Virus record (IMG/VR): IMGVR_UViG_3300028592_000004
Span: 1 to 64,000 of that record
Direction: 5' to 3' (one strand)
DNA: 64,000 nt
This document shows, piece by piece, positions 5,674 to 30,357 of the stretch (position 1 is the first letter of the stretch; each line of letters opens with the position of its first letter). A model generated the notes under the pieces. It was not told the origin of the DNA. It saw only the letters and a list, made by a program, of their open reading frames with translations, and did no database searches. The position numbers and the translations under genes were made by a program.

Positions 5674-6082
5674 GAGTTGCCTCGGGATGGGCGTCGACCT
5701 TCAGGTAGAAGAAATCGACGTCGTGGAATTCGAGATAGACCCGGGCCTGCTGGAAATCCTGCCCGAGAGCGAAGGCAAGATGCTGGACGGCGGCGCGGAA
5801 GTTATGCCAGGTGTCACCGAGCTTCCAGATCTCTGGATTACGAACACCAGTGATGACGAAGACAGGCTCGCCGTCCTCGGGACAGCCGCGGGCCATCTCG
5901 TAGAGGGCATTTCCAAGCATGACAACACAGCTGACTGCATTGCCCCACTTGTCGCGAATGTGGAGGTTGTGCCTGTCGATCGCGTGCTGAAGGAGCCGAC
6001 GATCATTCATCGGCACTTCGCCCTGAAGCTGTTTGTAACCCGGCTGGATGCCAAGAGTGATGCGGAAGGCTTCAGTCTTCAT
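5636..6082 (-). CDS. Hypothetical protein
   Basis: ORF with GCPEDGEP...RNP motif. Confidence 0.6.
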   Translation of the reverse strand: MKTEAFRITLGIQPGYKQLQGEVPMNDRRLLQHAIDRHNLHIRDKWGNAVSCVVMLGNALYEMARGCPEDGEPVFVITGVRNPEIWKLGDTWHNFRAAVQHLAFALGQDFQQARVYLEFHDVDFFYLKVDAHPEATHDPLRSSEVPER

Positions 6083-6530
6083 CTTCAGCTCCGAAGTGGA
6101 GAGCGTCCTTCAAGCGGACTTCCGGGTTGTCCGGAGCCGCAGAGCACTCGTCATTCGCCTGGAACGCCGTCAGGTTCGGCGTCCCACAGTAGACGCACTG
6201 CCCCAGGAAGTCCTGACCCTTCGGGCTCGTGCGTTCGAGAACATGCGTTGCCATGAGGTTCCTCAGGAATGTATCGCCGAGGGGAGCATTCACCGCTGCA
6301 AAACCCAAGCGGCGAGCGAGACACGCGCTGAGCTGGACTGTGTCGTAGAACGGCCTTGTCTTCGACAACTCGATGACGTAGACCGGCCCGCGAATAATCC
6401 CATTCGGTATAGGCCCCGCAAACGGAATAGTGAGCCCTGCGTACGGTGCGAAGTACTGAGTGGCCGGCCGAGCTCCCAAGGCAGCGGCAAAGCCACCCAG
6501 GAGTCGGCCGAAGAAGGTTCTGCGTTTCAC
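6072..6530 (-). CDS. Twin-arginine-signal protein with C-terminal CxxC
   Basis: MKRRTFFGRLLGGFAAALGA; CVYC. Confidence 0.65.
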   Translation of the reverse strand: MKRRTFFGRLLGGFAAALGARPATQYFAPYAGLTIPFAGPIPNGIIRGPVYVIELSKTRPFYDTVQLSACLARRLGFAAVNAPLGDTFLRNLMATHVLERTSPKGQDFLGQCVYCGTPNLTAFQANDECSAAPDNPEVRLKDALHFGAEDED

Positions 6531-7039
6531 GAGTCGTCCTCGTCTTCGTCGGGCGCAAATTCGATCTCGACGTCGAGATGGTGTTGGAGCTTAGCCAGAT
6601 CCGCATCCGAAACAAACCGAAGCGCGATCTGAAAGGCTTGCTGCAGATCACCGATCTCGTGATCCGGTTCAGACTCCTCGCCGTGCCGCTGAGCACGGTC
6701 GATCATCTGCTGATAGATTTCGTCGCGAGACACTGTTGGCTCCTGCCCCGGGCTGGGCATTTCATAAATCCGCGTCGGCGGAAGGATCTGAAGCTGGCCG
6801 AGAGCCCCAGGATTCCGAAGAAGCCCAGTGATCTTCTCGCAGTCGGCCGGCGACAGCCGATTCATCGTGAGCACCGATTGCCGCTCCATCGAGCTGTAGT
6901 CGGCGAGCCGGAACGGCATGGCTCCGGACATCGGCGGCATGTCATAGAGCGGAGACGGCGCCGAAGCCGCCACTTTACCGAGACCGAGCATCGAGGCGAC
7001 ACCGCCCACAACCCGGCCGAAGAAAGTTCTACGTTCCAT
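6527..7039 (-). CDS. Twin-arginine-signal protein
   Basis: MERRTFFGRVVGGVASMLGL. Confidence 0.65.
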   Translation of the reverse strand: MERRTFFGRVVGGVASMLGLGKVAASAPSPLYDMPPMSGAMPFRLADYSSMERQSVLTMNRLSPADCEKITGLLRNPGALGQLQILPPTRIYEMPSPGQEPTVSRDEIYQQMIDRAQRHGEESEPDHEIGDLQQAFQIALRFVSDADLAKLQHHLDVEIEFAPDEDEDDS

Positions 7040-7046
7040 GTAGCAC

Positions 7047-7517
7047 CTAGACTCCCTTTGCTTTGAGCAGAGCGAGGACGGCGTCCATTCCAGTCCGCCA
7101 GTCCTCCGGGCTGTCTGTATACCGGGTCACGTGGACGTTTGGAATCTCATTGCGCAACCAGAGCTCCTCGCACCGCGAGCGCGTCGCGGCAGGGATCAGC
7201 AGCGAATGGCGCACATCACACAGAGCGGATTCGATGTCACCACTTCGAAGGTAATCCAGCGCCTGAAGAATTCGTGCGAATTCAGGCGTCATGTGGTGCG
7301 GATAGGTGGTTCGCTCAAGCGGCACTTCGCCGGTCTGAGCCATGACCGCCCCGCCCAAGCAGACCAGACACACACCCTCCGCCGGGTGGTGCCAGCTGCT
7401 CATGTCGATTTCGTAGCGAGGATCCTGCTCGCATTTGCGTAGGTCCTCAAGGGCAAGCTCCAGCCACTCGGACAAAGCCCGGGGCTGGAGCTGATCAACA
7501 GCAGCAAATTCCGACAT
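7047..7517 (-). CDS. CxxCLAG-family protein, copy B
   Basis: LSEWLELALEDL, CLVCLGG, ALDYLRSG. Confidence 0.75.
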   Translation of the reverse strand: MSEFAAVDQLQPRALSEWLELALEDLRKCEQDPRYEIDMSSWHHPAEGVCLVCLGGAVMAQTGEVPLERTTYPHHMTPEFARILQALDYLRSGDIESALCDVRHSLLIPAATRSRCEELWLRNEIPNVHVTRYTDSPEDWRTGMDAVLALLKAKGV

Positions 7518-7525
7518 AGACTCCT

Positions 7526-7768
7526 TCAGCAGGGCTCGCCCCGCGCTGGTGGGACCATTTCAAAGAGCACCTGAACGAGCTGCTGCTCACTCAGGATCTC
7601 CGGATGCTGTCGCGCAGCCGCGATCAATCGCACCACAGCCACCGGGCCGTCCATACCACGAATGCTGTCGGCCAAATCGTAAAGCGACGTCGTGTCTGCG
7701 TTCGGAAAGGAGCGGTAGTTCGAAAACGACTCCTTGGCGTTGAGAATCAGCGTCGAGAGACCGTTCAT
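7526..7768 (-). CDS. Hypothetical protein
   Basis: ATG 2 nt after 20-bp site. Confidence 0.5.
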   Translation of the reverse strand: MNGLSTLILNAKESFSNYRSFPNADTTSLYDLADSIRGMDGPVAVVRLIAAARQHPEILSEQQLVQVLFEMVPPARGEPC

Positions 7769-7770
7769 TG

Positions 7771-7790
7771 TTCAATACCCGCGGATTGAG
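7771..7790. promoter_or_regulatory. 20-bp site, copy 2 (inverted spacer)
   Basis: TTCAATACCCGCGGATTGAG fills most of the intergenic gap. Confidence 0.75.
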
Positions 7791-7791
7791 T

Positions 7792-8127
7792 TCAGAGCAT
7801 CTTCGCGGCCAAGAGCAGCGTCAGCAGGTGGAACGCATTGTCCACCACGATGCTGCTCCAAGGCCCCATGTTGTCACGGAAGCCGGCCTGGCCGGCATGC
7901 CCCATGTACCAGTGGATAAACTGGCTGCGGTCGATCGCAAAGTGCGTCGCGAACAGCCAGAAAAGCGGCAGCAACGACCAGCAGCCACTGCAGGTCGCCA
8001 CCGCCAGGGTCCAGACAAGGCAATGCACCGCACAGGGCAGTGACGCCTTCTTCTTGTTGAGGGCCATCCAGTGGTTCTGGAGCAGATAGTCCCCAACCAT
8101 GTGGCCGACAATCATCTCGGCAAGCAT
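7792..8127 (-). CDS. DUF3307-like membrane protein
   Basis: GHMVGDYLLQNHWMALNK...VHC...VDNAFHL His/Asp pattern in hydrophobic helices. Confidence 0.65.
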   Translation of the reverse strand: MLAEMIVGHMVGDYLLQNHWMALNKKKASLPCAVHCLVWTLAVATCSGCWSLLPLFWLFATHFAIDRSQFIHWYMGHAGQAGFRDNMGPWSSIVVDNAFHLLTLLLAAKML

Positions 8128-8618
8128 TACAACTCCACCTCTTTCAGTTTGTCGGCGACGGCCTGGATGTAGGCAAAGAACTCAGCGTTCGAATCATTGC
8201 GGCTGTAAACCCACTCGACAGCGTCCGGCAGGCTAACAGGCCAACCAGAAAAACCGAGTGGACTCATCTTTTTGCGATCTGCCTCAGGAATGTAGCCGAC
8301 TGCGTCCTGAGCGTAGATGAGCGAGGTCTGGATGTGGCCACCACGGACAGCGTCGATTGCCTGGAGCAGATTTCGCTCAAACTGCGTGAGGCTGTGGAAC
8401 TCGTCCGCGAACCGGCTTGTCGGGTTGTGCCCGGCACCGGCCAGCACAGAGCCAGCCAGGCAGACGCGGCAGACACCCGGACGGGTGTAGTGCTGTTTGA
8501 GAAAGCAGGTCATATCGACCTCAAAGACTGGGTCCAGTTCGACCCGCTTGAGATCAGCAATAGCGAGTTCAAGCCACGCGGAGAACTTCCGCGGGCTCAT
8601 GTCGTGGGCTGGCGTCAT
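8127..8618 (-). CDS. CxxCLAG-family protein, copy C
   Basis: HDMSPRKFSAWLELAIADL, CRVCLAGS, AIDAVRGG. Confidence 0.75.
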   Translation of the reverse strand: MTPAHDMSPRKFSAWLELAIADLKRVELDPVFEVDMTCFLKQHYTRPGVCRVCLAGSVLAGAGHNPTSRFADEFHSLTQFERNLLQAIDAVRGGHIQTSLIYAQDAVGYIPEADRKKMSPLGFSGWPVSLPDAVEWVYSRNDSNAEFFAYIQAVADKLKEVEL

Positions 8619-9184
8619 ATCCCAAGCTCTTTCAGCTTAGCGACCACCCGATCCATGCCGTCGTAGAACGGCTGTTGGTCCGAAGCCGATTTCTTGTGCT
8701 CCCAGTAGCCGATTTCCAAAGAGCAGTCGTCGCCGGCAAAGCGAAGCTCAGCAATTCTCGGCCGCACAGCAGCGTCAATGAACCGGTTTTCGCTACCCAG
8801 CTCATCAAGTGCCGCGTCGATGTTGCCGTTCCGTAGCTGGTTGATCGCTTGCAGCAGCTCTTGGCTATCGGCACTGAGGTAGTTGAAGACATCTCGTTCA
8901 AAGGTCGTGGAGACGCCGGCGCCGGCCAGGACAGAGCCAGCCAGGCACATTTGGCATTGCGGAGTCAAATAATCCTCATGGCGGTGATGCGGATTGACTC
9001 TCGACTGCACGTAGAACACACCCATGTTCACTACGAACCCGGGCGTGACGGCGAACCGTCGAAGGTCCGCAACGGCAAGTTCGAGCCACGCGGAGAGGGA
9101 CCGCGGACTCATGTCGTGTACGATCTGCTCCTCTTTGAATTCGAGAAGAGATCCCAGCAGCGTCTTCGTGTCAGGCTCAGTCAC
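8615..9184 (-). CDS. CxxCLAG-family protein, copy D
   Basis: GTGA overlap start; HDMSPRSLSAWLELA, CQMCLAGS, AINQLRNG. Confidence 0.75.
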   Translation of the reverse strand: MTEPDTKTLLGSLLEFKEEQIVHDMSPRSLSAWLELAVADLRRFAVTPGFVVNMGVFYVQSRVNPHHRHEDYLTPQCQMCLAGSVLAGAGVSTTFERDVFNYLSADSQELLQAINQLRNGNIDAALDELGSENRFIDAAVRPRIAELRFAGDDCSLEIGYWEHKKSASDQQPFYDGMDRVVAKLKELGI

Positions 9185-9714
9185 AGCCCAAGACCTTTCA
9201 GTTCGAGAAGAACAGAGTGGATGTCTTCGAAGAACGGTTCGTTGTCGGGATCGTTCAGCTCCCAACTCGCCATCTCGTCTTCGAAGTTCGGTAGACGAGA
9301 CCCCTCGTCGAGCAGCTCACGGATCCGCTTCCAGTCGCTCTCGACGATGTAGCGGTTCTCGTCCTTGCTAAGCATGAGGTTGTAGAGAGCGCCCGCGATG
9401 CGACCACGTCGCAGCTTATCGATCGCGAACAGGAGGCCAGCGAGGTCCGCGTCGCCGCGGGTGATGTTTTCCATCGTGCCAGCCGGCGTCCAGTGATCCA
9501 ATCCGGCTCCGACGAGAATGGAACCGGCCAAGCACACGTAGCACGTGTCCGTGTGGAGCGTCGCCAGGAAGTAATCCATGTGCGGCGTGTATCTGGGGTC
9601 CTGCATGACCAGCTTCAGGTCCTGCACCGCCAGTTCGAGCCACTCGGAGAGTTTCCGAGGGCTCATGTCGTGCTGTTTAAGTGCGGTTTCCATCGCTACT
9701 TTCTGCGGCGTCAC
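9181..9714 (-). CDS. CxxCLAG-family protein, copy E
   Basis: HDMSPRKLSEWLELA, CYVCLAGS, AIDKLRRG. Confidence 0.75.
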   Translation of the reverse strand: MTPQKVAMETALKQHDMSPRKLSEWLELAVQDLKLVMQDPRYTPHMDYFLATLHTDTCYVCLAGSILVGAGLDHWTPAGTMENITRGDADLAGLLFAIDKLRRGRIAGALYNLMLSKDENRYIVESDWKRIRELLDEGSRLPNFEDEMASWELNDPDNEPFFEDIHSVLLELKGLGL

Positions 9715-10025
9715 AAGATGCCTTTCCGCGCTTTGAGCGCCTTGAGCTCATCCCAAATCAGACCGAGCCGGCCGCGGTACTGCGCTCCGTAGAACGTGAC
9801 CAGGGCATACCCGGGCATCGCTGTCGGCACGCCAAGGATGCCGGGCTCGGTCGTTTCGATGTTGAGGCCGGGCCAGGTCTGAACGACCTCCCGAAGATGA
9901 GGGATGTCCGCGATCTTGACGTTCTGATCGCACACCCACTGTGCGTTCCCGGTCCGCATCTTTGCTTCGTAGGCCAGAAACTTTTCATGCCAGTCATCGA
10001 AGCCCGGCACCTGCAGCTTGAGCAT
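9711..10025 (-). CDS. Hypothetical protein
   Basis: MLKLQVPGFDDW..., tight packing. Confidence 0.55.
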   Translation of the reverse strand: MLKLQVPGFDDWHEKFLAYEAKMRTGNAQWVCDQNVKIADIPHLREVVQTWPGLNIETTEPGILGVPTAMPGYALVTFYGAQYRGRLGLIWDELKALKARKGIL

Positions 10026-10026
10026 G

Positions 10027-10212
10027 TCAGATCCCCGTAATTTCGTCGTCGAACTCGTCAAACGCGTAGAGCAGCTTGATCGCCCAGTACATGGCAAGCA
10101 GCGTCAGTAGCACAACCTGCGAGAGCGGCTTCACGTGAAAGGCAGTCCACATCAGAGCCACGAAGGTGCCGCCCATCATGATGATGTGGACCCACAGCAG
10201 GAAGCGTTTCAT
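10027..10212 (-). CDS. Small two-helix membrane protein
   Basis: Two hydrophobic stretches. Confidence 0.6.
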   Translation of the reverse strand: MKRFLLWVHIIMMGGTFVALMWTAFHVKPLSQVVLLTLLAMYWAIKLLYAFDEFDDEITGI

Positions 10213-10400
10213 CGCAGCCCTTTCCAGCGGTCGCGAGATCGGAGCTTGCGTCGCTCCTTTCGCTGGGTTTTCTTCTTGGCCCTCAGCCTCTGCAGATCCT
10301 CGCCAGTCGGCTTGACGTGGTAGCCGTTGTGGTGGCTACCCCAGGCCGCAACGATCGCCTGCAGGGTGTCGTGAGGCTTAATCTTGATATCCCAGCTCAC
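10209..10400 (-). CDS. Small basic protein
   Basis: AAGGAGGAG before GTG; K/R-rich C-terminus. Confidence 0.5.
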   Translation of the reverse strand: MSWDIKIKPHDTLQAIVAAWGSHHNGYHVKPTGEDLQRLRAKKKTQRKERRKLRSRDRWKGLR

Positions 10401-10674
10401 GAAGCTCCTCCTTGGCCTGCTTGCCAACTCCGATACGGAGGTGGTGCATGAAGACCGGCTGGCCCGGTGCTTCCAGCGGCGAGCGCATCCATGCGCCAGG
10501 CAGAGCCATAGATTTCCCGATCGAGCGACCGATCCGAAGAACAATGGATCGTTCCTCGTAATACGCAGCCGGCAGGTCAGTGTAGGGCGGTGCTGTAAAG
10601 CGATGAGCCTCCAACAGCATATTCTCCAGCGTCGTGACGTGGTCAAACGACGCTGGATTGGTTGCAGGTCTCAA
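10378..10674 (-). CDS. Hypothetical protein
   Basis: AAGGA before TTG. Confidence 0.5.
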   Translation of the reverse strand: MRPATNPASFDHVTTLENMLLEAHRFTAPPYTDLPAAYYEERSIVLRIGRSIGKSMALPGAWMRSPLEAPGQPVFMHHLRIGVGKQAKEELRELGYQD

Positions 10675-10976
10675 GGCGTTCCTTTCTCTGGCTCTTCAAC
10701 CAGCGTCACTTCCCAGAAGTAGTAGAGCGCGTCAACCGCCTCACCATCCTTGCCGGCAGAGCGGACACGAACCATCTCCGGATAGACTTCACGCACATAG
10801 CCAGGCAAACCGGCCTTTGGCTGCACCCGCTTGCCCTTCCACTGGGTTTCGAGGTCCTGCATCCGGGCGTTGTAGGCTTCGTTGGCCTCCCGGGTCTGGA
10901 TCACAAGGTGAGCCAGCCCGTACAAAACGGCACCGCCGAAAACGGCGGTCAGGACGCCACTCCAGAACTTGTTCAT
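10671..10976 (-). CDS. Protein with N-terminal transmembrane helix
   Basis: MNKFWSGVLTAVFGGAVLYGLAHLVI; ATGA overlap. Confidence 0.6.
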   Translation of the reverse strand: MNKFWSGVLTAVFGGAVLYGLAHLVIQTREANEAYNARMQDLETQWKGKRVQPKAGLPGYVREVYPEMVRVRSAGKDGEAVDALYYFWEVTLVEEPEKGTP

Positions 10977-11629
10977 TCCCTTGCCTCTCCCGTGTAGGTC
11001 TTGCCACACGCCCGCGACCAGCCGTCCGGAATGTCCGGCTCAAAGACGGTGCCAAACTTAACCTTTCGGCAGCCACAAGCCCAGATCGTCCCCTTCGGAC
11101 TGATCAGCATGTCCTCGCAACAGCACCAGTCGTCGTTTGACTGGATGCCGTTCTTGAGAGCCGAGCCGTGAGGAGTGATGATCGTGTTCGACCGCACACC
11201 CTCGTGGTTCTTCCGGCGTTGCAGGTCGCGAAACGCGACAACGACAGCCTTGTCGATCGGGTCGTGCCACTCGTCTTGCGAGAGCACAGCCTCCAGCTTT
11301 CCTTCAGCGCACAGTCGAGCCAGCCGGAGAGCCGTCTTCGTCTGTGAGCCGTTGGTGATGATCAGCAGCGGGATACCGCTGTTGGAGAGCATCACTTCCT
11401 CACGGCGGTCCCACTCGTGGTACTCCAGCGCCCGCGTGACGAACGGCCAGAATTCCGGATGAAGCGTCGGTTCACCGCCACCGAGGCAGAAGTGATCACC
11501 GCGGTCGTGCGTGAGGCCCAGCGCCCGCAGAAAGACCTCACGTGACATGTCGACACCGATGCCCGGTCTGCAGCTGAAACAGCAGTGGGCACAGGCCATA
11601 TCGCAGCGTGTCGTGATCTGGATGTAGAT
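10973..11629 (-). CDS. Radical SAM protein, apparent ATC start
   Basis: IYIQITTRCDMACAHCC gives CxxxCxxC; GGEPTLHP; ITNG; C-terminal CCC...ACGC. Confidence 0.8.
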   Translation of the reverse strand: MYIQITTRCDMACAHCCFSCRPGIGVDMSREVFLRALGLTHDRGDHFCLGGGEPTLHPEFWPFVTRALEYHEWDRREEVMLSNSGIPLLIITNGSQTKTALRLARLCAEGKLEAVLSQDEWHDPIDKAVVVAFRDLQRRKNHEGVRSNTIITPHGSALKNGIQSNDDWCCCEDMLISPKGTIWACGCRKVKFGTVFEPDIPDGWSRACGKTYTGEARE

Positions 11630-11631
11630 GA

Positions 11632-11877
11632 CTACCCTCCGGCGTGAGCGAACTCAGGCGCGCTCTCGGCGAAGTCCTCCACAGTGCACAGCTCAACGAG
11701 CGACGTCGGGCTAACCGAGATCAGGTCGCCAGTCGGCGAAGCGCCGTAAACGAGCCGCGGGTTGAGCCCGTGATGCTGCACGGACTTTGCGCTCAGTCGG
11801 AGATGGACCTTGCCACCGCTCCGCTTCCGGAAGTACTGCCCTTCGGCAATGACCTCCGCGTCAACGATCAGTCTCAT
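11632..11877 (-). CDS. Hypothetical protein
   Basis: ATGA overlap. Confidence 0.55.
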   Translation of the reverse strand: MRLIVDAEVIAEGQYFRKRSGGKVHLRLSAKSVQHHGLNPRLVYGASPTGDLISVSPTSLVELCTVEDFAESAPEFAHAGG

Positions 11878-12107
11878 TTCGACTCCAGGATTTGAGGATC
11901 GAACGAGCTCATCTCCCAGTAGGCGAGAGGATCGAGATCGTCCCAGGCTTGATGTGGCAGATCGCTGAACTGAGGCGAGAATCTCGCTCGCCAGGACGCA
12001 GCAAATTGCCGGACATAGATACGTCTGACATTGACGACCCGGATCCGCGGCACAGGTTCGCTCGGATCCTTCCGACCGAGGCAGATGCAGTAATCGACCT
12101 CAGTCAT
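11874..12107 (-). CDS. Hypothetical protein
   Basis: MTEVDYCICL..., ATGACTGA overlap. Confidence 0.5.
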   Translation of the reverse strand: MTEVDYCICLGRKDPSEPVPRIRVVNVRRIYVRQFAASWRARFSPQFSDLPHQAWDDLDPLAYWEMSSFDPQILESK

Positions 12108-12405
12108 CCGCCGGCTCTCCCCCATCCGGATCCGGATTGGGCCTGTTGTGCCGGCTAGTCTGGTCGACCGTGAAGACTCCAGTCGCCGCGAGAACGCCCT
12201 GGATCCAACCCAGCCAACGGAAGGCTTTGTCGATCCGGTTGTCCCGCACAAACCCGATGATCCCGTCGCAGACGTAGATCAGGTGGTTGTGCTGCTGCTC
12301 GTCAGTCCACAGGCTCCAATCCAGTTCGACTGGACCGCGGACCGGCTCGCCCTTGAGCAGCTTTCGGTAGAGCTGCGCCACCTCAATGATCTTTTCGTTC
12401 GTCAC
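12100..12405 (-). CDS. Hypothetical phage protein (RWLGWIQG motif)
   Basis: HLIYVCDGI...KAFRWLGWIQGVL; paralog at 30783. Confidence 0.65.
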   Translation of the reverse strand: MTNEKIIEVAQLYRKLLKGEPVRGPVELDWSLWTDEQQHNHLIYVCDGIIGFVRDNRIDKAFRWLGWIQGVLAATGVFTVDQTSRHNRPNPDPDGGEPADD

Positions 12406-12415
12406 ACTGTGCCTT

Positions 12416-12526
12416 TCAAATGCTCCAGTACTGCGGAGGGTCGTCGTTCCGTCCCCAGAAGAGGATGATCAGAACAACGATCCCAACCGCGACATAGAAA
12501 CGCCAGTCGCTCGCAGCATCTTGCAT
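12416..12526 (-). CDS. 36-aa single-TM protein
   Basis: Own translation MQDAASDWRFYVAVGIVVLIILFWGRNDDPPQYWSI; AAGGA upstream. Confidence 0.55.
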   Translation of the reverse strand: MQDAASDWRFYVAVGIVVLIILFWGRNDDPPQYWSI

Positions 12527-12541
12527 GGGATCCTTCCCAAG

Positions 12542-12964
12542 TCAGCGGCGTCTGGATCTCACCCGGCGCCGGAGATCCTTCAGCTGTTCAGCCCGGTCAT
12601 GAGCCGTGACCAGGCCTTTCTTCTTCCGCCAATTCTCTACGATCTGGCGAGCTGCATTCCACCATGCGGCCACCTCTTCTTGGCCGTAGATGCCTTTCGT
12701 CTGGCGGTGTGCGACCGGCGAGGGTAGTTCCGCGGCCGTCAACCGGCCCTGGTCTGACCCGTCGATCATGTCTCCGCACTGGATCACCAGCGCGGTGAAA
12801 GCCACCCGGGTTTTGAAGTCCGGGAAAGTCTCCCTCAGGAGATCGGGGAGCGACCTCGCGTTGGGGCGAGGCTCGACGTACGGGCAGAGCTTGGCGCCGG
12901 AGATCTCGGGGATCGGCCAAGCCTCCGCCCAGTTGACAGTCGGATCGAGCCGTGGCTTAGCCAT
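12542..12964 (-). CDS. Hypothetical protein
   Basis: MAKPRLDPTVNW... Confidence 0.55.
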   Translation of the reverse strand: MAKPRLDPTVNWAEAWPIPEISGAKLCPYVEPRPNARSLPDLLRETFPDFKTRVAFTALVIQCGDMIDGSDQGRLTAAELPSPVAHRQTKGIYGQEEVAAWWNAARQIVENWRKKKGLVTAHDRAEQLKDLRRRVRSRRR

Positions 12965-12978
12965 CAGCAAACTCCTTG

Positions 12979-13347
12979 TCAGGCACTGATCGGCGCTTCG
13001 CAACGAGCGCACTTGGCGTCGCCTGGCACAACTGACGGCGACAGATCCTTGTAGTCGTGGGCGTGGCCAGGACTGAATGGGAGCGTTGCCCCGAAACGGC
13101 AATCCGCGCTGCAGAAGTACCAGACGACGCCGGATGGCTCCGGATCCCGATCACTGTTGGGGTTCTTGAACATCCAGTCCTGCCACGGAACTTCGCCCCG
13201 CGAGGCATGCTGACTCGGGGTGAGCACGCTGCCATTGTCGTCAATGGCGAACGCCTCTTCGAGATCCCACTGAATCGAGTTGTTCGGTGCGTCTCGATAG
13301 CTCCAGAGGCAGATGACTGCCTCGACCGGCCGCTTTTCTTTAGCCAT
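12979..13347 (-). CDS. Hypothetical protein, Cys-containing C-terminus
   Basis: FCSADC ... KCARC. Confidence 0.55.
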   Translation of the reverse strand: MAKEKRPVEAVICLWSYRDAPNNSIQWDLEEAFAIDDNGSVLTPSQHASRGEVPWQDWMFKNPNSDRDPEPSGVVWYFCSADCRFGATLPFSPGHAHDYKDLSPSVVPGDAKCARCEAPISA

Positions 13348-13567
13348 CAGCTTCCTCTGCCGCAGCATAGATGCTCTCCTCGGGCTGGCGTCGCTCCGCG
13401 AACAGAGCATAGCCGTACCAAGTACCGGACGCGAAACAGAACATGGCGAGCAGACAGATGCCTGAGAACAAACTGATTCCGCAGACGTCCTCCAGATAGA
13501 GCCACGCCCGAATGACGGCCTTCAAGAGTTCGTCATCTGTCGTGATCGTGAACTCTGTGAGCTGCAC
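13340..13567 (-). CDS. Small membrane protein
   Basis: Hydrophobic central segment. Confidence 0.5.
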   Translation of the reverse strand: MQLTEFTITTDDELLKAVIRAWLYLEDVCGISLFSGICLLAMFCFASGTWYGYALFAERRQPEESIYAAAEEADG

Positions 13568-13866
13568 GGACGGTCCTCGCGAACGATGTTGTGGGGATAG
13601 GAGTAGTCGTGGTGCGTCCCGGTGCAGCGACCGGCGTCCACACTGTCAGTGGAACGATCGTAGCGATGGCGCTTATCGCTACAGATCAGCGTTTCGTAGC
13701 CCCTCGTGGTCGTGCGTCCGAGCACAGTGATCCACTTGCCGGCCTGAGTCAGATACTGCTGGCCGACAACGTACTTGAAGGGGCTCGGTGCGGCTGGCAC
13801 AGCTCCGGGAAGAGCCAGCGCCGCCGTAAGCCCGGCAGTCTGTGCCAGAAAGGTTCGTCGCTTCAT
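13522..13866 (-). CDS. Twin-arginine-signal protein
   Basis: MKRRTFLAQTAGLTAALALPGAVPA. Confidence 0.65.
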   Translation of the reverse strand: MKRRTFLAQTAGLTAALALPGAVPAAPSPFKYVVGQQYLTQAGKWITVLGRTTTRGYETLICSDKRHRYDRSTDSVDAGRCTGTHHDYSYPHNIVREDRPCSSQSSRSRQMTNS

Positions 13867-13878
13867 GGTGCTCCTGTT

Positions 13879-14463
13879 CTACTGGTAGTCGCCAGTGGTT
13901 CTGGGAATGGTCGCCTCGATCTGTCGCTCGCTCGCAAGGGCACGGTCGTGCACTTCTTGAGTGACCTTTTTCTTCCCACGGCAAGTTGGACAAATCGGGT
14001 TGTGCGAATGGACCTCACCCGCTCCGCCACAGGATGGGCAGTCCGCCAACGCCTCGATTTTCTTTGGAACGTAGGCCGGCGGATTGCCGGACAGGCAGCA
14101 GGGCTCGCCGTCCTTATCGAGGTCGATGAAGCCCTTTGAATCGAGCTCCGAGTCCAGCTTGAGCAACGCGTCCCTGGCTGCTTGCTTCTGCTCTTTCGTG
14201 CCAGCAATTGGATCAACGCCGGCGATGAAGTACCGCGTCGGGATGTGCCGCAAGCGGTGCATCTCTTCACGAACGGCCTCTGTGATCGCTGCGACGGCTT
14301 CAGTCTCATTCGCCATCAAGGCGGCGATCAGACTGCCGTTCGGATCCGGCTTCAGTTTCAGAAGCTCCCGACACTCGGTGATGAGCGGGTCGAGCTCTTC
14401 GTCGCTGAGGTCCTCGTCGTACCACTCAACAAGGCGTCGAGCGATCTCTTGAGCTGTCAGCAT
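13879..14463 (-). CDS. Protein with DnaJ-type zinc-finger repeats
   Basis: CPSCGGAG and CPTCRGKK. Confidence 0.6.
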   Translation of the reverse strand: MLTAQEIARRLVEWYDEDLSDEELDPLITECRELLKLKPDPNGSLIAALMANETEAVAAITEAVREEMHRLRHIPTRYFIAGVDPIAGTKEQKQAARDALLKLDSELDSKGFIDLDKDGEPCCLSGNPPAYVPKKIEALADCPSCGGAGEVHSHNPICPTCRGKKKVTQEVHDRALASERQIEATIPRTTGDYQ

Positions 14464-14464
14464 G

Positions 14465-14635
14465 TCAGAGTGCTCCTTTCCGAGTCCAGCCGTAAATGGC
14501 AAGCGCGATCAGCACCATTGCGATCCAGCCTGTCAGCAGACGCGACAGTGGATCCAAGTCGCCCAGACCCACAACCAGGATGAAGCAACCAGCAATGGTG
14601 AGCTGACAGACAGCCAGGAATTGAAGGAAGGTCAT
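14465..14635 (-). CDS. Small membrane protein
   Basis: Two hydrophobic helices; AAGGAG upstream. Confidence 0.55.
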   Translation of the reverse strand: MTFLQFLAVCQLTIAGCFILVVGLGDLDPLSRLLTGWIAMVLIALAIYGWTRKGAL

Positions 14636-14636
14636 G

Positions 14637-14804
14637 TCAAGGCTCCTTATGCCGGTTCGCCCGCCGCTTGTGGATCTCGGCCAAAGCACGCTCGGCTTGC
14701 GCCCGCTCTTCCGGATCCGGCGATTCGTTGATGATCAGACGCAGGGTCAGGGCATCTGTGTCGTCAAGGGCGTCCTGCAGCCAGGGGTCAAGGTCGTCGC
14801 TCAT
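14637..14804 (-). CDS. 55-aa hypothetical protein
   Basis: Own translation MSDDLDPWLQDALDD...; ATGA overlap. Confidence 0.55.
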   Translation of the reverse strand: MSDDLDPWLQDALDDTDALTLRLIINESPDPEERAQAERALAEIHKRRANRHKEP

Positions 14805-15860: not shown

Positions 15861-15865
15861 GAAAA

Positions 15866-24877: not shown

Positions 24878-24890
24878 CAGGTTTCCTGGG

Positions 24891-26286: not shown

Positions 26287-26302
26287 TTCGCATCACCTCC
26301 TC

Positions 26303-26956: not shown

Positions 26957-27032
26957 AGAGCCTCCCGTGGGTAGAAGTGAGCATCCAAGGCCGGAGCTCT
27001 CTGGCAGGCTCCGGCGCGGGGCGCCCACTCCC

Positions 27033-27500
27033 TTACAGAAGGGCAGAAATGCTGCAGCTCTTCAGCCCAGTCGTGAGATCGGTCAGCTGCAGCCCCTTTG
27101 TGAGCGCTTTCGCCACGTCCTCGTATTCGTCGCGAGCGAAATCCTCGCCGAGACCAGGTCGGCCCGGCCTGCTCAGATGCGTCTCGAACACATTGTCGAA
27201 CAAGCGGATCCTGAACTCGTGTCCGTTGACCGGGTTGTAGATCCTCCTGTCCGTCAGGCGTTCAATCGTTGCTTCGACGCTGTCGGTCTCCAGGTCGCGG
27301 CGTGAAACCACACCCGCCTTGAGATCCTCCAACGAGATGTCTCTGCAGGCATTCCAGCACGCCACGAGGCGCTCAGCGTCCTGCGGATCCGACGCTGTGA
27401 AGATGACAGTCCCAGAGAAGTTCGCCGGGACCGCGTTCGTGTAGTCCTGGTCCTTCTGGAGTTTGGGATACACCATCAGGACCGTAATGGGGTCAGTCAT
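27033..27500 (-). CDS. Hypothetical protein (ERL-x-ACWNAC family)
   Basis: AERLVACWNACRDIS. Confidence 0.6.
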   Translation of the reverse strand: MTDPITVLMVYPKLQKDQDYTNAVPANFSGTVIFTASDPQDAERLVACWNACRDISLEDLKAGVVSRRDLETDSVEATIERLTDRRIYNPVNGHEFRIRLFDNVFETHLSRPGRPGLGEDFARDEYEDVAKALTKGLQLTDLTTGLKSCSISALL

Positions 27501-27699
27501 CGGAACTCCCAGGGTTGATTTCGTGAGCCTGGTCCTCCGGATCGAGCTTCCTACTCATCACGCCCATGACGGTCGTGTACTCCTCATCCTTGGTGTCGCC
27601 GGCCAGGGCCTTCTGGATTGCCGCCTCAAGTGAGTCGGCTTCCACGGTGTAGTCGCACCCGTGCATCTCAGTTGTGATGACGGGAACACGATAGAGCGG
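27493..27699 (-). CDS. Small hypothetical protein
   Basis: AAGGAG before TTG; TVEADSLEAAIQKA. Confidence 0.55.
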   Translation of the reverse strand, partial: PLYRVPVITTEMHGCDYTVEADSLEAAIQKALAGDTKDEEYTTVMGVMSRKLDPEDQAHEINPGSSDD

Positions 27700-27713
27700 C
27701 AAAGCGGCTCCTT

Positions 27714-27956
27714 TCAGGCTGGTGGAAGAAGTTCCTCGGGCTGGTAGCCATACTTGTTGAGAACGGCAGCCATATCGGCTGCCGTAAGAGACTGAGTCAC
27801 CATCCCATCGGACAGCGAGATCGACACATAGCGTTTCGACGGCGTTTCCAGACACTCCGTGCCTGCCACGTAGCCGATCAGCCAGCGTTCTTTCGTATCT
27901 GGCTTTCCATAGCGGCGCCCAGGCTTGATGTCGTCGGCTTGCCATTCAACTTTCAT
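27714..27956 (-). CDS. Hypothetical protein
   Basis: Tight packing. Confidence 0.55.
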   Translation of the reverse strand: MKVEWQADDIKPGRRYGKPDTKERWLIGYVAGTECLETPSKRYVSISLSDGMVTQSLTAADMAAVLNKYGYQPEELLPPA

Positions 27957-28170
27957 TGGGCATCATCCATTCTGGGAAGGTGATGTTGATCCGGACGGGC
28001 ATCCAGTCCCCGTTCGGGTCGCTCGTCACCTCTACGTTGATCTCTGGCGGGCCGTACACCTCCTCAGCGACAGCCTTGAACGCCTGCAGGAACTTCGCGT
28101 GGGTCTCTGGTGTCAGAGGCTTGCCAATGAAGCCCTGGAGGCGTTCGCGTAGCTGGTCCTTGTAGCTCAC
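27946..28170 (-). CDS. Hypothetical protein
   Basis: GTGA overlap. Confidence 0.55.
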   Translation of the reverse strand: MSYKDQLRERLQGFIGKPLTPETHAKFLQAFKAVAEEVYGPPEINVEVTSDPNGDWMPVRINITFPEWMMPNES

Positions 28171-28625
28171 GGGAGCTCGTCCGCGTAGACAGACTCGTAG
28201 TGCAAGCCGAGAGCATGTAGCTCACCGCCCAGAACCGAGCACCACATGTGGAAGAGATACTCCAGGGACAACGCGTTGTATCTCCGCAACAGTTCTCTAC
28301 AGGTTTCGGGATCGGGTTCCTGAAACCAGAGGCAGTGAGGCGCAATACGATCGCCAGAATGCAGAGCCAACGTGAGAGTCGGCCAGTTGCGCTGTGGGAA
28401 CGTAATGCGGATCCCTCGCAGGGCGTACTTCTGGCCAGTGAGGAACTCGTGAGCGGCGGTGATATCGACCAGACGCGGCATGTACTTCTGGCAGATGTAG
28501 TGCAGCTCCCTGAATACCTCGGCATGGCTGCGTCCGTAGACAGGTGCAGCCGCCGGCACCCTGCTGACGACAAAGGTCGACAGGGCCGTGGCAGCCATAG
28601 TTCGTAGAGCGTCGCGTCTGTTCAT
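28167..28625 (-). CDS. Twin-arginine-signal protein
   Basis: MNRRDALRTMAATALSTFVV. Confidence 0.6.
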   Translation of the reverse strand: MNRRDALRTMAATALSTFVVSRVPAAAPVYGRSHAEVFRELHYICQKYMPRLVDITAAHEFLTGQKYALRGIRITFPQRNWPTLTLALHSGDRIAPHCLWFQEPDPETCRELLRRYNALSLEYLFHMWCSVLGGELHALGLHYESVYADELP

Positions 28626-28858
28626 GGCGTTTCGTTCTCGTGGGCGCTGACATCGAAATCTTCCAGATTCCGTATCGGCACAGTTTCGTGAAACCAATCC
28701 AGAGCATCATCCTCTGTTTCGTCGCGGCCGGCGGGGACCTCGTAGTCCCGATAGGACAGCTTTCCGTCGAGGCCGGCTGGCAGGTCCACACGATCGTCAG
28801 CGTCGAGCTTTTGCGTCGGCACCAGCTGCGTGCATCGCACAATGTAACCGAGGCTCAT
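28622..28858 (-). CDS. Small acidic hypothetical protein
   Basis: ATGA overlap. Confidence 0.55.
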   Translation of the reverse strand: MSLGYIVRCTQLVPTQKLDADDRVDLPAGLDGKLSYRDYEVPAGRDETEDDALDWFHETVPIRNLEDFDVSAHENETP

Positions 28859-29064
28859 GGCGACTTCCTCCGATACAGGTCAGTCAGCTGCAGGCGGCGA
28901 TTCTTCCACCAGCCCTGCATATCGTAGTTCCTCTGTCGCTGGTGGAACTCCTCGTGCTGCATTACCGCTAGGGCTGCAGTCGCAAGGGCGTCTCGGGAGA
29001 GACGAAAGTCCTCGGGGAAGAGGTGTGTCAGAACCATGCTTTGAAAGGGGTGGGTCAGAACCAT
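28855..29064 (-). CDS. Hypothetical protein with duplicated N-terminus
   Basis: MVLTHPFQS-MVLTHLFP. Confidence 0.5.
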   Translation of the reverse strand: MVLTHPFQSMVLTHLFPEDFRLSRDALATAALAVMQHEEFHQRQRNYDMQGWWKNRRLQLTDLYRRKSP

Positions 29065-29077
29065 GCTTTGAAAGGGG
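29027..29077. repeat. Tandem duplication, 27-bp period
   Basis: GTCAGAACCATGCTTTGAAAGGGG exact at 29027-29050 and 29054-29077. Confidence 0.9.
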
Positions 29078-29426
29078 CCAGGATGCGACGTAGAGACTTG
29101 GTAGCGCTGTACTCCTCGCCAGTCTCATCGTTCCTGTCCTCGCCAGTATCCTGCAAATCCAGCAGCTGAGCACGGGCCGCGTTGACCACCTTCTTGAGTG
29201 CACCAGTCTTGAGCTGGACTGTCGAAATCCCGCGGCAGGCGTTCCAGCAAGCAATCAAGCGTTCGGTTGTGATCTGCTCAGTGGCGTCGCTGAATTCCGT
29301 ACCTGAGCATTTGGCGATGATCGAGTTTGTTGCGTCTCGCCAGATCGTCGCCTTTGGGCCACTCGACAGCTTTTCGAGTGAAAGATCAATCGGTCCAGAT
29401 GACGTTTTCTTCTTCGCCACACTCAC
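29055..29426 (-). CDS. Hypothetical protein (ERL-x-ACWNAC family)
   Basis: TERLIACWNACRGIS. Confidence 0.6.
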   Translation of the reverse strand: MSVAKKKTSSGPIDLSLEKLSSGPKATIWRDATNSIIAKCSGTEFSDATEQITTERLIACWNACRGISTVQLKTGALKKVVNAARAQLLDLQDTGEDRNDETGEEYSATKSLRRILAPFKAWF

Positions 29427-29959
29427 CTCCGCTCTTTGAATTCCTTGTGGGCCTTAGCGGTCGCCTCGATCAGCGAGGCCCGCTTTCCTACAGCGTCAGC
29501 CCGCTCCAAGTAGGCCTCACACTGGATCTTGGTCTCGGAGTGATCATCCCCAGGCTTCGTCAGGCCGAGTTTCTCTGCCATCCTGTGGCGGGTCACCCAA
29601 GGCAACTCGAAGAGCTGGAACACAAACGTCCGCAACTCTTCTACGGTGAACTCCTTCTCCGGCGGCTTGCCGAAGGTTTCGGTCAGAAGGGCCTCAGCCG
29701 CCTCCACCTCTTCCTTCGTCACCTTCCCTGGATGAACAGGACAGCCATAGACGTAGATGAACTCGCCAGGCCGCTCGCGATAGCCGCGGCCGTAGCAGTT
29801 GTCGATCGCAGGGCACTGGCAGCCAGCCGCGATCGCTTCTTTGGTCCCAGGGTTGGGCGCCAGCTGCTCCTGGTATTTATCGCCGCAGAGGCAGTCGTCT
29901 CCAGGAGCGTAGGGAGCGTCCTGAGTCGAGCCACAGCTGGGGCATTTGAGAAACGTCAT
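29423..29959 (-). CDS. Cys-rich multi-zinc-module protein
   Basis: CPSCG..CLCG; PNPGT-x-EA...GCQCP..DN...CPVH. Confidence 0.6.
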   Translation of the reverse strand: MTFLKCPSCGSTQDAPYAPGDDCLCGDKYQEQLAPNPGTKEAIAAGCQCPAIDNCYGRGYRERPGEFIYVYGCPVHPGKVTKEEVEAAEALLTETFGKPPEKEFTVEELRTFVFQLFELPWVTRHRMAEKLGLTKPGDDHSETKIQCEAYLERADAVGKRASLIEATAKAHKEFKERR

Positions 29960-30357
29960 CAGGGATCCTGTCTGAGCAGCCCGTTCTCACGAGCCTTTTC
30001 CTCGTAGATTGCGTGCAGCTGATCGAGCATTTGTTTTGAGTCTGCACGGACCGGGCCTCGACGTATGCGCTCGGCCCGAAGAGCAAACAGATTCTGGTCG
30101 TAGACGACCTCTCGTCGGCGAGCTTCGACATAGTCTGGGCTGTTAGCGTGGCTGCCCACTGTGCCGAGCATGATCGTACGAATCCGGCTTGTTTTCACCA
30201 GGTCGTCGAAGATGTAGATGAGACGCTGCAGTTGTGCGTCCGACAGCTCAGCAAGCCGATAGGGCCTGATGTCTTTCTCGACAGCACCGGCAACAGGGAT
30301 GCTCGGCAGCACGAGGGCTGCCAGCGTGGTCTTGAGAAACTCTCTGCGGTCCATCAT
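29959..30357 (-). CDS. Twin-arginine-signal protein
   Basis: MMDRREFLKTTLAALVLPSIPVAGA. Confidence 0.65.
   Translation of the reverse strand: MMDRREFLKTTLAALVLPSIPVAGAVEKDIRPYRLAELSDAQLQRLIYIFDDLVKTSRIRTIMLGTVGSHANSPDYVEARRREVVYDQNLFALRAERIRRGPVRADSKQMLDQLHAIYEEKARENGLLRQDP

What the first reader, a model, noticed from the sequence alone, without database searches (positions are those of the whole stretch)
6072..30357. Five unrelated phage proteins carrying twin-arginine signal-like leaders
Seen: MKRRTFFG (6072), MERRTFFG (6527), MKRRTFLA (13522), MNRRDALR (28167) and MDRREFLK (29959), each followed by a hydrophobic Ala/Gly/Leu helix. The mature parts are unrelated to each other. Known: S/T-R-R-x-F-L-K is the Tat consensus, and Tat substrates are unusual in phages. 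Inference: folded effectors exported to the periplasm (superinfection exclusion, receptor masking), or a mobile leader that jams or hijacks the Tat translocon. It also hints at a Tat-rich host such as Planctomycetota, which is unproven.
Basis: partly seen in the sequence, partly recalled or inferred. Interest (0 to 1): 0.6.

Follow-up and report, generated by a model that had tools for sequence, protein, structure and literature searches.

The report
Twin-arginine export leaders on phage genes
A 229-kb soil jumbo phage that probably infects Planctomycetota carries five small genes of unknown function that begin with twin-arginine export-signal-like leaders, so the phage probably sends several small proteins into its host's periplasm, a moderately unusual but not revolutionary finding.

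Summary
The five leaders are real. All lie on the minus strand, at the 5' ends of tightly packed genes in the accessory-gene arm of a complete 229,210-bp jumbo phage. They are far more than chance: 7 N-termini pass a simple RR plus h-region rule, against 0.2-0.45 expected.

They are not equally convincing as Tat signals:
- **g5 and g3** are the top two of 7,747 possible starts under a leader profile built from Schlesneria and Planctomicrobium genomes (19.9 and 17.1 bits).
- **g4** is borderline at 9.3 bits.
- **g1 and g2**, an adjacent pair sharing one leader, have RRTFF but short h-regions and fit no profile.
- None reaches the Pfam or TIGRFAM curated cut-offs.

The g2 leader is translated and constrained. 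Against a mosaic relative it shows 10 synonymous and 2 conservative changes in 26 codons.

The Planctomycetota guess has independent support. A phage DUF1559 pilin-like gene is closest to Planctomycetaceae genes, and those genomes carry TatC and 50-61 Tat-signal matches each.

The passenger domains are mutually unrelated. Relatives of two of them (g3, g2) occur elsewhere without a leader, which suggests leaders were grafted onto small domains.

What the exported proteins do is untested. Superinfection exclusion and envelope remodelling are inference only. This is a new member of a known kind.

The parts
6072..6530 (-). g1: 152-aa ORFan with a GTG start. The leader is about codons 1-20 (6471-6530): M-K-RR-T-F-F-G-R, then an 11-residue Gly/Ala/Leu h-region, then Arg. 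Four Cys in the mature part, including C-x2-C.
   Evidence: Translation. GTGA overlap with the g2 stop and GAGGA upstream. No homologue among 5.8 billion proteins or GenBank phages. Identical in the related strain L157. No match to Tat profiles.
6527..7039 (-). g2: 170 aa. The leader is about codons 1-25 (6965-7039), with the same RRTFFGR core as g1, a 12-residue h-region, Lys, then V-A-A. A variable linker and a conserved acidic C-terminal domain follow.
   Evidence: Translation. Leader similarity to g1. The relative L157 has 10 synonymous and 2 nonsynonymous differences in codons 1-26, then an 11-aa indel, then 11 synonymous and 22 nonsynonymous differences in the last 123 codons. A C-terminal motif is shared with small ORFs on L155 and L156; the L156 one appears leaderless.
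13522..13866 (-). g3: 114 aa. The leader is about codons 1-25 (13792-13866): M-K-RR-T-F-L-A, 25 uncharged residues, V-P-A before the predicted cut. The mature part is a small beta-barrel domain of a widespread phage family.
   Evidence: Translation. TAT_signal 16.9 bits and TIGR01409 13.9 bits. Host-clade leader HMM 17.1 bits. Leaderless homologues P0006-P0008 at 66-68% identity. phrog_30047 and phrog_9244. AF2 pLDDT 80-90 for the core. BFVD hits to uncharacterised proteins of Acinetobacter phage Acj61 and Escherichia phage EcS1.
28167..28625 (-). g4: 152-aa ORFan. The leader is about codons 1-25 (28551-28625): M-N-RR-D-A-L-R, a 13-residue h-region, Arg, then V-P-A.
   Evidence: Translation. 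ATGA overlap with the stop of the upstream gene. TAT_signal 13.8 bits. Host-clade HMM 9.3 bits, which is at noise level for all six-frame starts. No homologue among 1.84 billion representatives. Alternative 143-aa call without RR.
29959..30357 (-). g5: 131/132-aa ORFan. The leader is about 24 codons from the second ATG (30283-30354): M-D-RR-E-F-L-K, 17 uncharged residues, A-G-A before the predicted cut. The mature part is predicted helical.
   Evidence: Translation. TAT_signal 17.9 bits, the best in the genome. Host-clade HMM 19.9 bits, the best of 7,747 starts. GGAGGG upstream. No homologue. The AF2 model was too poor to use, pLDDT 54.6.

Best explanation
The five genes encode small pre-proteins with N-terminal export signal peptides of the twin-arginine (Tat) type, made by a soil jumbo phage whose host is most likely a member of the Planctomycetaceae.

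Proposed mechanism:
1. The genes sit in the one-strand array of small accessory genes (window about 0.5-37 kb) and are translated in the cytoplasm.
2. The short n-region with RR-x-Phe/Ala-Leu/Phe, a weakly hydrophobic Ala/Gly/Leu/Thr h-region and, in g1, g2 and g4, a basic residue before the c-region direct the small passenger domain to the host TatBC receptor.
3. The folded domain crosses the cytoplasmic membrane.
4. Signal peptidase I cuts after a V-P-A, V-A-A or A-G-A site.
5. The released 90-130-residue domains act in the periplasm or on the envelope of the infected cell. Likely roles are exclusion of superinfecting phage, masking or modifying a receptor, or controlling cell-wall enzymes or lysis timing.

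The leaders were added to passengers of separate origin. The g3 domain, and probably the C-terminal motif of g2, occur in other phages without any leader. g1 and g2 share one leader through local duplication.

What is shown: the leaders exist, are non-random and are positioned at supported starts. One is under purifying selection as a peptide. g3 and g5 fit Tat profiles, including one from the candidate host clade. The candidate host clade has TatC and many Tat substrates.

What is inferred: the Tat route for g4, and especially for g1 and g2; cleavage; periplasmic action; and any specific function.
For: - **Existence and starts:**
- **Excess over chance:** 7 observed against 0.2-0.45 expected.
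- **Pfam and TIGRFAM Tat profiles:** the only matches in all six frames of the genome are g5, g3 and g4.
- **Host-clade leader HMM** (29 leaders from Schlesneria sp. T3-172 and Planctomicrobium sp. SH527): g5 19.9 bits and g3 17.1 bits, ranking first among 7,747 possible starts. The best of 2,973 internal control windows scored 7.2 bits.
- **h-region hydrophobicity:** 1.83-2.17, inside the host Tat range (mean 1.63, maximum 2.25) and below the phage's own Sec/lipoprotein-type leaders at 2.4-3.0.
- **Purifying selection on the g2 leader:** 10 synonymous and 2 conservative changes in 26 codons, immediately followed by a variable, indel-bearing linker.
- **Host assignment:** the DUF1559 + N_methyl phage gene has best relatives in Planctomycetota and Planctomycetaceae at 40-59% identity.
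- **Host Tat system:** TatC is present in 4 of 4 of those genomes, and there are 50-61 TAT_signal matches in each of the two scanned for the signal.
- **Leaderless homologues:** the g3 domain and the g2 C-terminal motif.
- **Signal peptide rather than membrane anchor:** uncharged stretches of 11-25 residues are mostly too short for a transmembrane anchor.
Against: - No leader reaches a curated cut-off: PF10518 best 17.9 against 22.7 bits, TIGR01409 best 13.9 against 16.7 bits.
- g1 and g2 match no Tat profile. Their uncharged stretches (11 and 12 residues) are shorter than any of the 29 host leaders, whose minimum is 13.
- g4's host-HMM score is no better than the best spurious ORFs, and one gene caller starts it after the RR.
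- The n-regions are minimal (M-x-RR), whereas host leaders have 4-12 residues before RR.
- Passenger domains that are cytoplasmic in other phages could mean these proteins also act in the cytoplasm.
- The host is inferred from one gene family only. There is no CRISPR spacer or prophage evidence.
- There are no expression data: no RNA run holds the sequence.
- SignalP, TatP and similar predictors could not be run.
Confidence: 0.6

Rival explanations
1. The leaders are ordinary Sec-type (general secretory) signal peptides that happen to carry two arginines in the n-region. The proteins are exported unfolded through SecYEG, and the resemblance to Tat signals comes from GC-rich codon bias towards Arg, Ala and Gly. 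This may hold for g1, g2 and g4 only, with g3 and g5 being Tat.
For: - g1 and g2 fail all Tat profiles, and g4 is borderline.
- All scores are under the curated cut-offs.
- The genome has 61% GC, with Arg at 6.9% and Ala at 9.3% of residues.
- RR leaders of the same spelling sit on unrelated proteins of low-GC viral contigs, where Sec export is just as plausible.
Against: - Hydrophobicity of all five h-regions is in the Tat range and clearly below the phage's own Sec/lipoprotein-type leaders.
- All five have RR, not KR, RK or KK, at exactly residues 3-4, followed by a hydrophobic pair. Only 5 other N-termini have KR or RK with such an h-region.
- g1, g2 and g4 carry a basic residue just before the c-region. 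From general knowledge of Tat signals, this is a Sec-avoidance feature.
- g3 and g5 carry RR-x-F-L, the core of the Tat consensus.
Confidence: 0.2
2. The leaders are not export signals for their passengers. They act on the membrane or the translocon itself. They might tether the small domains to the cytoplasmic face of the inner membrane, or occupy TatBC as decoys that block export of host Tat substrates during infection.
For: - Passenger domains of g3 and g2 are leaderless, and presumably cytoplasmic, in other phages.
- The h-regions of g1 and g2 are short, at 11-12 residues.
- Several predicted cut sites lie next to proline, which could slow processing. This is an inference from the sequences.
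- The putative host depends heavily on Tat, with at least 50 signal matches per genome.
Against: - There is no positive evidence.
- The architecture (n, h and c regions with small-x-small sites conserved in the g2 and g4 variants) is that of cleavable signal peptides.
- Five different passengers would be unnecessary for a decoy.
- h-regions this short and weakly hydrophobic do not make stable membrane anchors.
Confidence: 0.08
3. Annotation artefact: the real starts lie downstream, the RR stretches are untranslated or are translated only by accident, and their similarity to Tat leaders is coincidence in GC-rich DNA.
For: - Homologues of g3 start exactly at the domain.
- One gene caller starts g4 at Met-10.
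- My own codon-usage caller did not pick g3 and started g4 downstream.
Against: - 10 synonymous against 2 nonsynonymous changes in the g2 leader.
- Shine-Dalgarno motifs and ATGA/GTGA coupling sit exactly at the leader starts.
- Observed count is 7 against 0.2-0.45 expected.
- g5 and g3 rank first and second among 7,747 candidate starts in all six frames.
- The upstream genes end immediately before the leader starts.
Confidence: 0.04

Closest known systems
Bacterial twin-arginine (Tat) signal peptides (Pfam PF10518 TAT_signal; TIGR01409), as on the Gfo/Idh/MocA-type and other periplasmic proteins of Planctomycetaceae
   Same: The RR-x-F-L(-K) core is present in g3 and g5, and RR followed by two hydrophobic residues in all five. 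The h-region is a weakly hydrophobic Ala/Gly/Ser/Thr/Leu stretch. The c-region is small-x-small, with a basic residue before it in three. Total length is 20-27 residues. The h-region hydrophobicity matches leaders from Schlesneria and Planctomicrobium.
   Different: The n-region is reduced to M-x, against 4-12 residues in host leaders. The S/T before RR is missing. Scores are below curated cut-offs. g1 and g2 have F-F-G-R instead of F-L-K, with h-regions of 11-12 residues. The passengers are 90-130-residue phage ORFans, not cofactor enzymes.
Phage-encoded periplasmic or envelope-acting accessory proteins that use host export signals: T4 Imm/Sp superinfection exclusion, T4 antiholin RI with a cleavable signal peptide (PMC8385771), T5 Llp-type receptor-blocking lipoproteins
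   Same: Small phage accessory proteins with N-terminal export signals, encoded outside the structural modules, that act outside the cytoplasm of the infected cell. T4 Sie is described as phage-encoded self-protection that blocks DNA entry (PMC13128918).
   Different: There is no sequence or fold similarity to any of them. Those known cases use Sec-type signals, signal-anchor-release domains or lipoboxes (general knowledge), not twin-arginine leaders. Function here is untested.
phrog_30047 / phrog_9244 small beta-barrel domain of unknown function (for example uncharacterised proteins of Acinetobacter phage Acj61 and Escherichia phage EcS1)
   Same: The g3 mature domain matches by HMM (4e-18), by sequence to metagenomic homologues at 66-68% identity, and by predicted fold (E 3e-6, 47% identity).
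   Different: In those relatives the domain stands alone (70-84 aa, no leader) or is embedded in larger proteins. Only the copy in this phage and its near-identical strains carries an N-terminal RR leader.

Membership tests
Tat signal peptide (PF10518 / TIGR01409) | Profile score at or above the curated cut-off | tested here: not met
   Best PF10518 scores were 17.9 (g5), 16.9 (g3) and 13.8 (g4), against a cut-off of 22.7. Best TIGR01409 score was 13.9 (g3), against 16.7. g1 and g2 gave no match. In two Planctomycetaceae genomes only about a sixth of the listed matches exceed the cut-off, and scores run from 13 to 30 bits.
Tat signal peptide (PF10518 / TIGR01409) | Twin arginine followed by x and two hydrophobic residues, close to the N-terminus | tested here: met
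   RRTFF (g1, g2), RRTFL (g3), RRDAL (g4, weakest) and RREFL (g5), all at residues 3-7.
Tat signal peptide (PF10518 / TIGR01409) | Uncharged, only moderately hydrophobic h-region of about 13 or more residues | tested here: inconclusive
   Uncharged runs were g3 25, g5 17, g4 13, g2 12 and g1 11. The host leaders have a minimum of 13. Hydrophobicity of 1.83-2.17 lies within the host Tat range and below Sec-type leaders of the same phage.
Tat signal peptide (PF10518 / TIGR01409) | Signal peptidase I site (small residues at -3 and -1) after the h-region | tested here: inconclusive
   Judged by eye only. Plausible sites are V-P-A (g3, g4), V-A-A (g2, kept in the variant strain) and A-G-A (g5). g1 is unclear (L-G-A). 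No predictor was available.
Tat signal peptide (PF10518 / TIGR01409) | A Tat translocase in the cell where the protein is made | tested here: met
   This holds for the candidate host clade only. TatC (PF00902) scored over its cut-off in 4 of 4 Planctomycetota genomes holding the nearest relatives of the phage DUF1559 gene. The phage itself has no TatA/B/E. The actual host is not identified.
Tat signal peptide (PF10518 / TIGR01409) | Export that depends on TatC and on the RR pair | not testable with these tools
   Needs reporter fusions in tat+ and tat- strains and RR-to-KK variants.
Superinfection-exclusion / receptor-masking proteins of phages | Homology to a characterised exclusion protein, or demonstrated exclusion phenotype | tested here: not met
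   No Pfam hit at E<=1 other than the TAT_signal matches and one weak DUF383 match, and no NCBIfam hit other than TIGR01409. No GenBank phage hit for g1, g2 or g5. PHROGs was run on g3 only and gave unknown-function families. The phenotype is not testable here.
phrog_30047 domain family (g3 passenger only) | Significant HMM and sequence match over the conserved core | tested here: met
   phrog_30047 at 4.2e-18 over residues 28-98. 31 invariant columns are shared with four metagenomic homologues.

The most novel reading that the evidence does not exclude
This phage lineage repeatedly grafts minimal twin-arginine leaders onto small, fast-folding domains that work in the cytoplasm in other phages. 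That would relocate them, already folded, into the large periplasm of a planctomycete host. Tat would then serve as a general, modular delivery route for phage effectors, and possibly also as a way to compete with host Tat traffic. Leader gain or loss would act as a simple evolutionary switch of the compartment in which a phage effector works.
Probability: 0.2. Interest if true: 0.65.

Novelty: new member of a known kind. Interest (0 to 1): 0.42.

Why it matters
Phage proteins that act outside the cytoplasm decide superinfection exclusion, receptor availability and lysis timing. The known examples use Sec signals, signal-anchor-release domains or lipoboxes. Phage-encoded Tat substrates are barely documented; a 2026 review of Tat transport mentions none.

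A set of five in one genome gives a concrete, testable case. Two fit a profile of Tat leaders from the candidate host clade, and one is visibly under purifying selection. The case would show a phage exploiting the folded-protein export route of a host phylum (Planctomycetota) that relies heavily on Tat and for which very few phages have been studied. The leaderless relatives of two passengers also offer a natural experiment on how a signal peptide is gained by a viral gene.

If the leaders turn out to be plain Sec signals, the finding reduces to ordinary secreted phage ORFans.

Tried and rejected
- **Homology searches.** g1, g4 and g5 returned only themselves and near-identical strains. The two long repetitive proteins that hit g4 (P0011, P0012) gave only scattered sub-threshold Pfam fragments, and I dismissed them as low-complexity matches.
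- **GenBank phages.** tblastn gave nothing for g1, g2 and g5.
- **IMG/VR scan with g3.** It found 27 loci, but these are convergent RR leaders on unrelated ~250-aa proteins of low-GC contigs, not relatives. The scan with g5 found none. The scan with the tail sheath found no related phage.
- **ESM Atlas look-ups of g1 and g2.** Scores were 0.86 or lower and TM 0.40 or lower, so leads only. The language model placed g2 near Tat-signal clusters at 0.80-0.81, which is within noise.
- **Structure.** The g3 core folds confidently, but PDB matches are weak (SH3/Tudor-like, E>0.1). The g5 single-sequence model (pLDDT 54.6) was too poor to search.
- **Single mobile leader cassette.** Rejected, because only g1 and g2 align at DNA level.
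- **Phage-borne Tat component.** Rejected: no TatA/B/E match.
- **Reads.** Seven soil-metagenome runs hold the stretch and none is RNA. Contigs laid on 27500-31000 (3.5 kb, under the operators' 6,000-letter limit) were fragments of the same or a near-identical strain and gave no useful variation.
I reached it through the look-up of encoding contigs instead.
- **HXS periplasmic defence (PMC13128918).** I considered a link because a radical-SAM-like gene lies 2 kb from g3. None of the five proteins has His-x-Ser repeats, and in the passages I read the paper mentions a Tat signal only as the CueO peptide used in test constructs, so I dropped it.

Full report
**What the window is.** The 64-kb window is the first part of a single 229,210-bp record. 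The genome tool identifies it as an IMG/VR virus record that CheckV rates as complete.

- It has 61% GC. A codon-usage gene call gives about 288 genes, 275 of them on the minus strand, covering 89% of the sequence.
- Large genes match phage DNA polymerase, a multisubunit-type RNA polymerase beta subunit, tail sheath and nicotinamide phosphoribosyltransferase.
- The RNA polymerase gene is only about 32% identical to its best GenBank phage relatives, Salmonella phage Arash and several Vibrio phages.
- No close relative of the tail sheath is found in IMG/VR.

So this is a jumbo phage of a poorly sampled lineage. The DNA occurs in soil metagenomes.

**The observation.** The leaders sit at 6530 (g1, GTG start), 7039 (g2), 13866 (g3), 28625 (g4) and 30354/30357 (g5).

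The genes are packed head to tail, and the starts are supported:
- g1's GTG overlaps g2's stop.
- g4's ATG overlaps the stop of the gene upstream.
- g5's first ATG does the same.
- g3 and g5 have AGGAG and GGAGGG just upstream, and g1 has GAGGA.

Public gene callers included the RR leader in g1, g2, g3 and g5. For g4 they gave both versions.

**Is it more than chance?** I used a simple rule: RR within residues 2-9, then an 11-residue uncharged window with mean Kyte-Doolittle hydropathy of at least 1.6.
- 7 of 289 N-termini pass. These are the five, a lipoprotein-like gene and a prepilin-like gene.
- Treating 42,936 internal positions as mock N-termini predicts 0.2. Shuffling each N-terminus predicts 0.45.

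All five lie within about 58 consecutive gene slots of 289, in the arm of small ORFan genes. By my own arithmetic, five random genes would cluster this tightly less than 1% of the time.

**How Tat-like are they?**

*Curated profiles.* The Pfam TAT_signal and TIGR01409 profiles, run over all six frames of the genome, match only g5 (17.9 bits), g3 (16.9 and 13.9) and g4 (13.8). All are below the curated cut-offs of 22.7 and 16.7.

*A host-specific test.* I took 29 leaders found by the Pfam model in Schlesneria sp. T3-172 and Planctomicrobium sp. SH527 and built an HMM from them.
- Among the 289 phage N-termini, g5 (19.9 bits), g3 (17.1) and g4 (9.3) are the top three. The best of 2,973 internal control windows scores 7.2.
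- Among all 7,747 possible start codons of ORFs of 50 or more codons in six frames, g5 and g3 remain clearly first. g4 falls to the level of the best spurious ORFs. g1 and g2 do not register.

*h-regions.* All five have best-window hydropathy of 1.83-2.17. That is inside the range of the host Tat leaders (mean 1.63, maximum 2.25) and below the phage's own Sec- or lipoprotein-type leaders at 2.4-3.0.

*Uncharged stretches.* These are 25 (g3), 17 (g5), 13 (g4), 12 (g2) and 11 (g1) residues, against a minimum of 13 in the host set.

*Other features.* g1, g2 and g4 carry Arg or Lys just before the c-region, a feature known from general Tat biology to disfavour Sec. Plausible signal-peptidase sites follow: V-P-A in g3 and g4, V-A-A in g2, A-G-A in g5. 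These were judged by eye only.

*Verdict on type.* g3 and g5 are good Tat candidates. g4 is probable. g1 and g2 are RR-bearing signal-like leaders whose export route is open.

**Are the leaders translated and functional?** A scan of metagenome contigs with g2 found a mosaic relative, a 25.7-kb contig (L154/L157). Its genes are 54-100% identical to those of the window.
- g1 and g3 are identical there.
- g2 is 77% identical and informative. In the 26 leader codons there are 12 differing codons. Ten are synonymous and two are conservative (Val to Ala in the h-region, Ser to Ala next to the cut site).
- Directly after the leader comes a variable linker with an 11-residue insertion.
- The last 123 codons show 11 synonymous and 22 nonsynonymous differences.

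The leader peptide is therefore under stronger purifying selection than the passenger. That rules out an untranslated or accidental extension, at least for g2. A g4 variant from another sample changes A-A-A to A-S-A in the c-region and so keeps a small-x-small pattern.

**The passengers.** The mature parts are unrelated to each other and to every other gene of the phage. Only the g1 and g2 leaders are alike, about three-quarters identical in DNA. This fits a local duplication followed by divergence or replacement of the passenger.

g1, g4 and g5 have no homologues beyond near-identical strains in 5.8 billion proteins or 1.84 billion representatives.

The g3 passenger is a conserved small beta-barrel:
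- AF2 pLDDT is 80-90 over the core.
- It belongs to phrog_30047 and phrog_9244, both of unknown function.
- Its fold and sequence relatives include uncharacterised proteins of T4-like Acinetobacter and Escherichia phages.
- Its closest metagenomic homologues (66-68% identity) are 70-84-residue proteins that begin exactly at the domain, with no leader. A fourth has a different N-terminal extension.
- They sit in arrays of small ORFs on otherwise unrelated contigs of 40-50% GC.

The C-terminal motif of g2 recurs in small ORFs on two other contigs. One of these starts, coupled to the upstream stop, right before the motif and has no leader.

That points to leader acquisition in this lineage.

**The host.** Outside the window, at 216,964-218,118, the phage carries a gene with a prepilin N-methylation motif and a DUF1559 domain (PF07596, 7e-46). 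The 80 best genomic relatives (40-59% identity) are almost all Planctomycetota: unclassified MAGs, Planctomycetaceae, Schlesneria, Planctomicrobium, Gimesia.
- Four such genomes all have TatC.

The phage has no TatA/B/E of its own.

**Mechanism, and what remains inference.** The most economical reading is that the phage makes several small pre-proteins that the host Tat system carries across the cytoplasmic membrane in folded form. This is most likely for g3 and g5. The proteins would then act in the periplasm or on the envelope. Tat would suit small domains that fold quickly or bind a metal in the cytoplasm; g1 and g4 each have four cysteines.

What they do there is unknown. None resembles a characterised exclusion, receptor-masking or lysis-control protein. 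Those roles are suggested only by analogy with T4 Imm/Sp and RI (PMC13128918, PMC8385771).

The rivals are:
- ordinary Sec signals with RR, most plausible for g1 and g2;
- membrane or translocon-directed peptides that are not true export signals;
- mis-annotated starts, which is now unlikely.

**Literature.** A comprehensive 2026 review of Tat transport mentions phages only through SlyD and phiX174, the phage shock protein, and T4 RI. It names no phage-encoded Tat substrate. Other searches found nothing closer. Jumbo phages predicted to infect Planctomycetes have been reconstructed from lake enrichments (PMC9040852). RR-type leaders do occur on proteins of other IMG/VR contigs, so the feature is not unique to this phage.

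**Verdict.** These are new members of a known kind: twin-arginine-type signal peptides, here on accessory proteins of a planctomycete jumbo phage. Interest is moderate. It would rise if Tat-dependent export and a periplasmic function were shown.

Noticed in passing
L010:6964-8118 (genome 216,964-218,118, minus strand; outside the window): The phage encodes a 384-aa protein with a prepilin N-methylation motif plus a DUF1559 domain. This family is hugely expanded in Planctomycetota. The best genomic relatives are 57-59% identical, on short contigs of Planctomycetota MAGs. It serves as a host marker and is possibly a phage-borne pseudopilin.
   Followed up: partly
window 7047-7517, 8127-8618, 8615-9184, 9181-9714 (minus strand): Four tandem paralogues of about 160-190 aa (30-43% identical to each other) lie directly upstream of g2. 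In the related strain they are among the most diverged genes (57-87%). This is a fast-evolving paralogue array of unknown function.
   Followed up: partly
L157 (contig Ga0247823_10000852) against window about 1,600-17,700: The related strain is a mosaic. Neighbouring genes range from 54% to 100% protein identity, with sharp block boundaries, one of them inside g2 near window 6,900. This indicates frequent recombination in the accessory arm.
   Followed up: partly
window 10973-11599 (minus strand): A 208-aa protein with a radical SAM domain match just over the Pfam cut-off (31.1 against 29.5 bits) lies among the small ORFans, about 2 kb from g3.
   Followed up: no
L007:8191-9375 and L007:10357-10833 (genome 176,191-177,375 and 178,357-178,833, minus strand): Two lipoprotein-like genes with a lipobox-type Cys after a strongly hydrophobic leader. 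The second also has Pro-Val-Asn repeats. They could be spanin or envelope components. A Sec-type leader is also seen at genome 198,870-199,511.
   Followed up: no
L008:9999-11470 and L010:17545-17619: A cluster of seven tRNA genes (Gln, Glu, Ser, Leu, Tyr, Trp, Phe), plus a separate tRNA that ARAGORN calls tRNA-SeC with anticodon TCA. The latter could read UGA. No sign of recoding was looked for.
   Followed up: no
L011-L037 (IMG/VR contigs, mostly from sample 3300045988): 27 viral contigs carry roughly 250-aa proteins starting with an MKRRTFLA-type leader, on low-GC DNA unrelated to this phage. RR-type signal peptides on phage-contig proteins are therefore not rare.
   Followed up: partly
window 38282-39685 (minus strand): A full-length nicotinamide phosphoribosyltransferase (phrog_448, 9e-133), an NAD-salvage auxiliary gene typical of large phages.
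   Followed up: no
window 13879-14502 and 7792-8127 (minus strand): The gene directly upstream of g3 has a weak DnaJ-type CxxCxGxG zinc-finger match (E 6e-4, below cut-off). The 111-aa gene at 7792-8127 carries DUF3307, according to the precomputed Pfam hit on its 99%-identical homologue.
   Followed up: no
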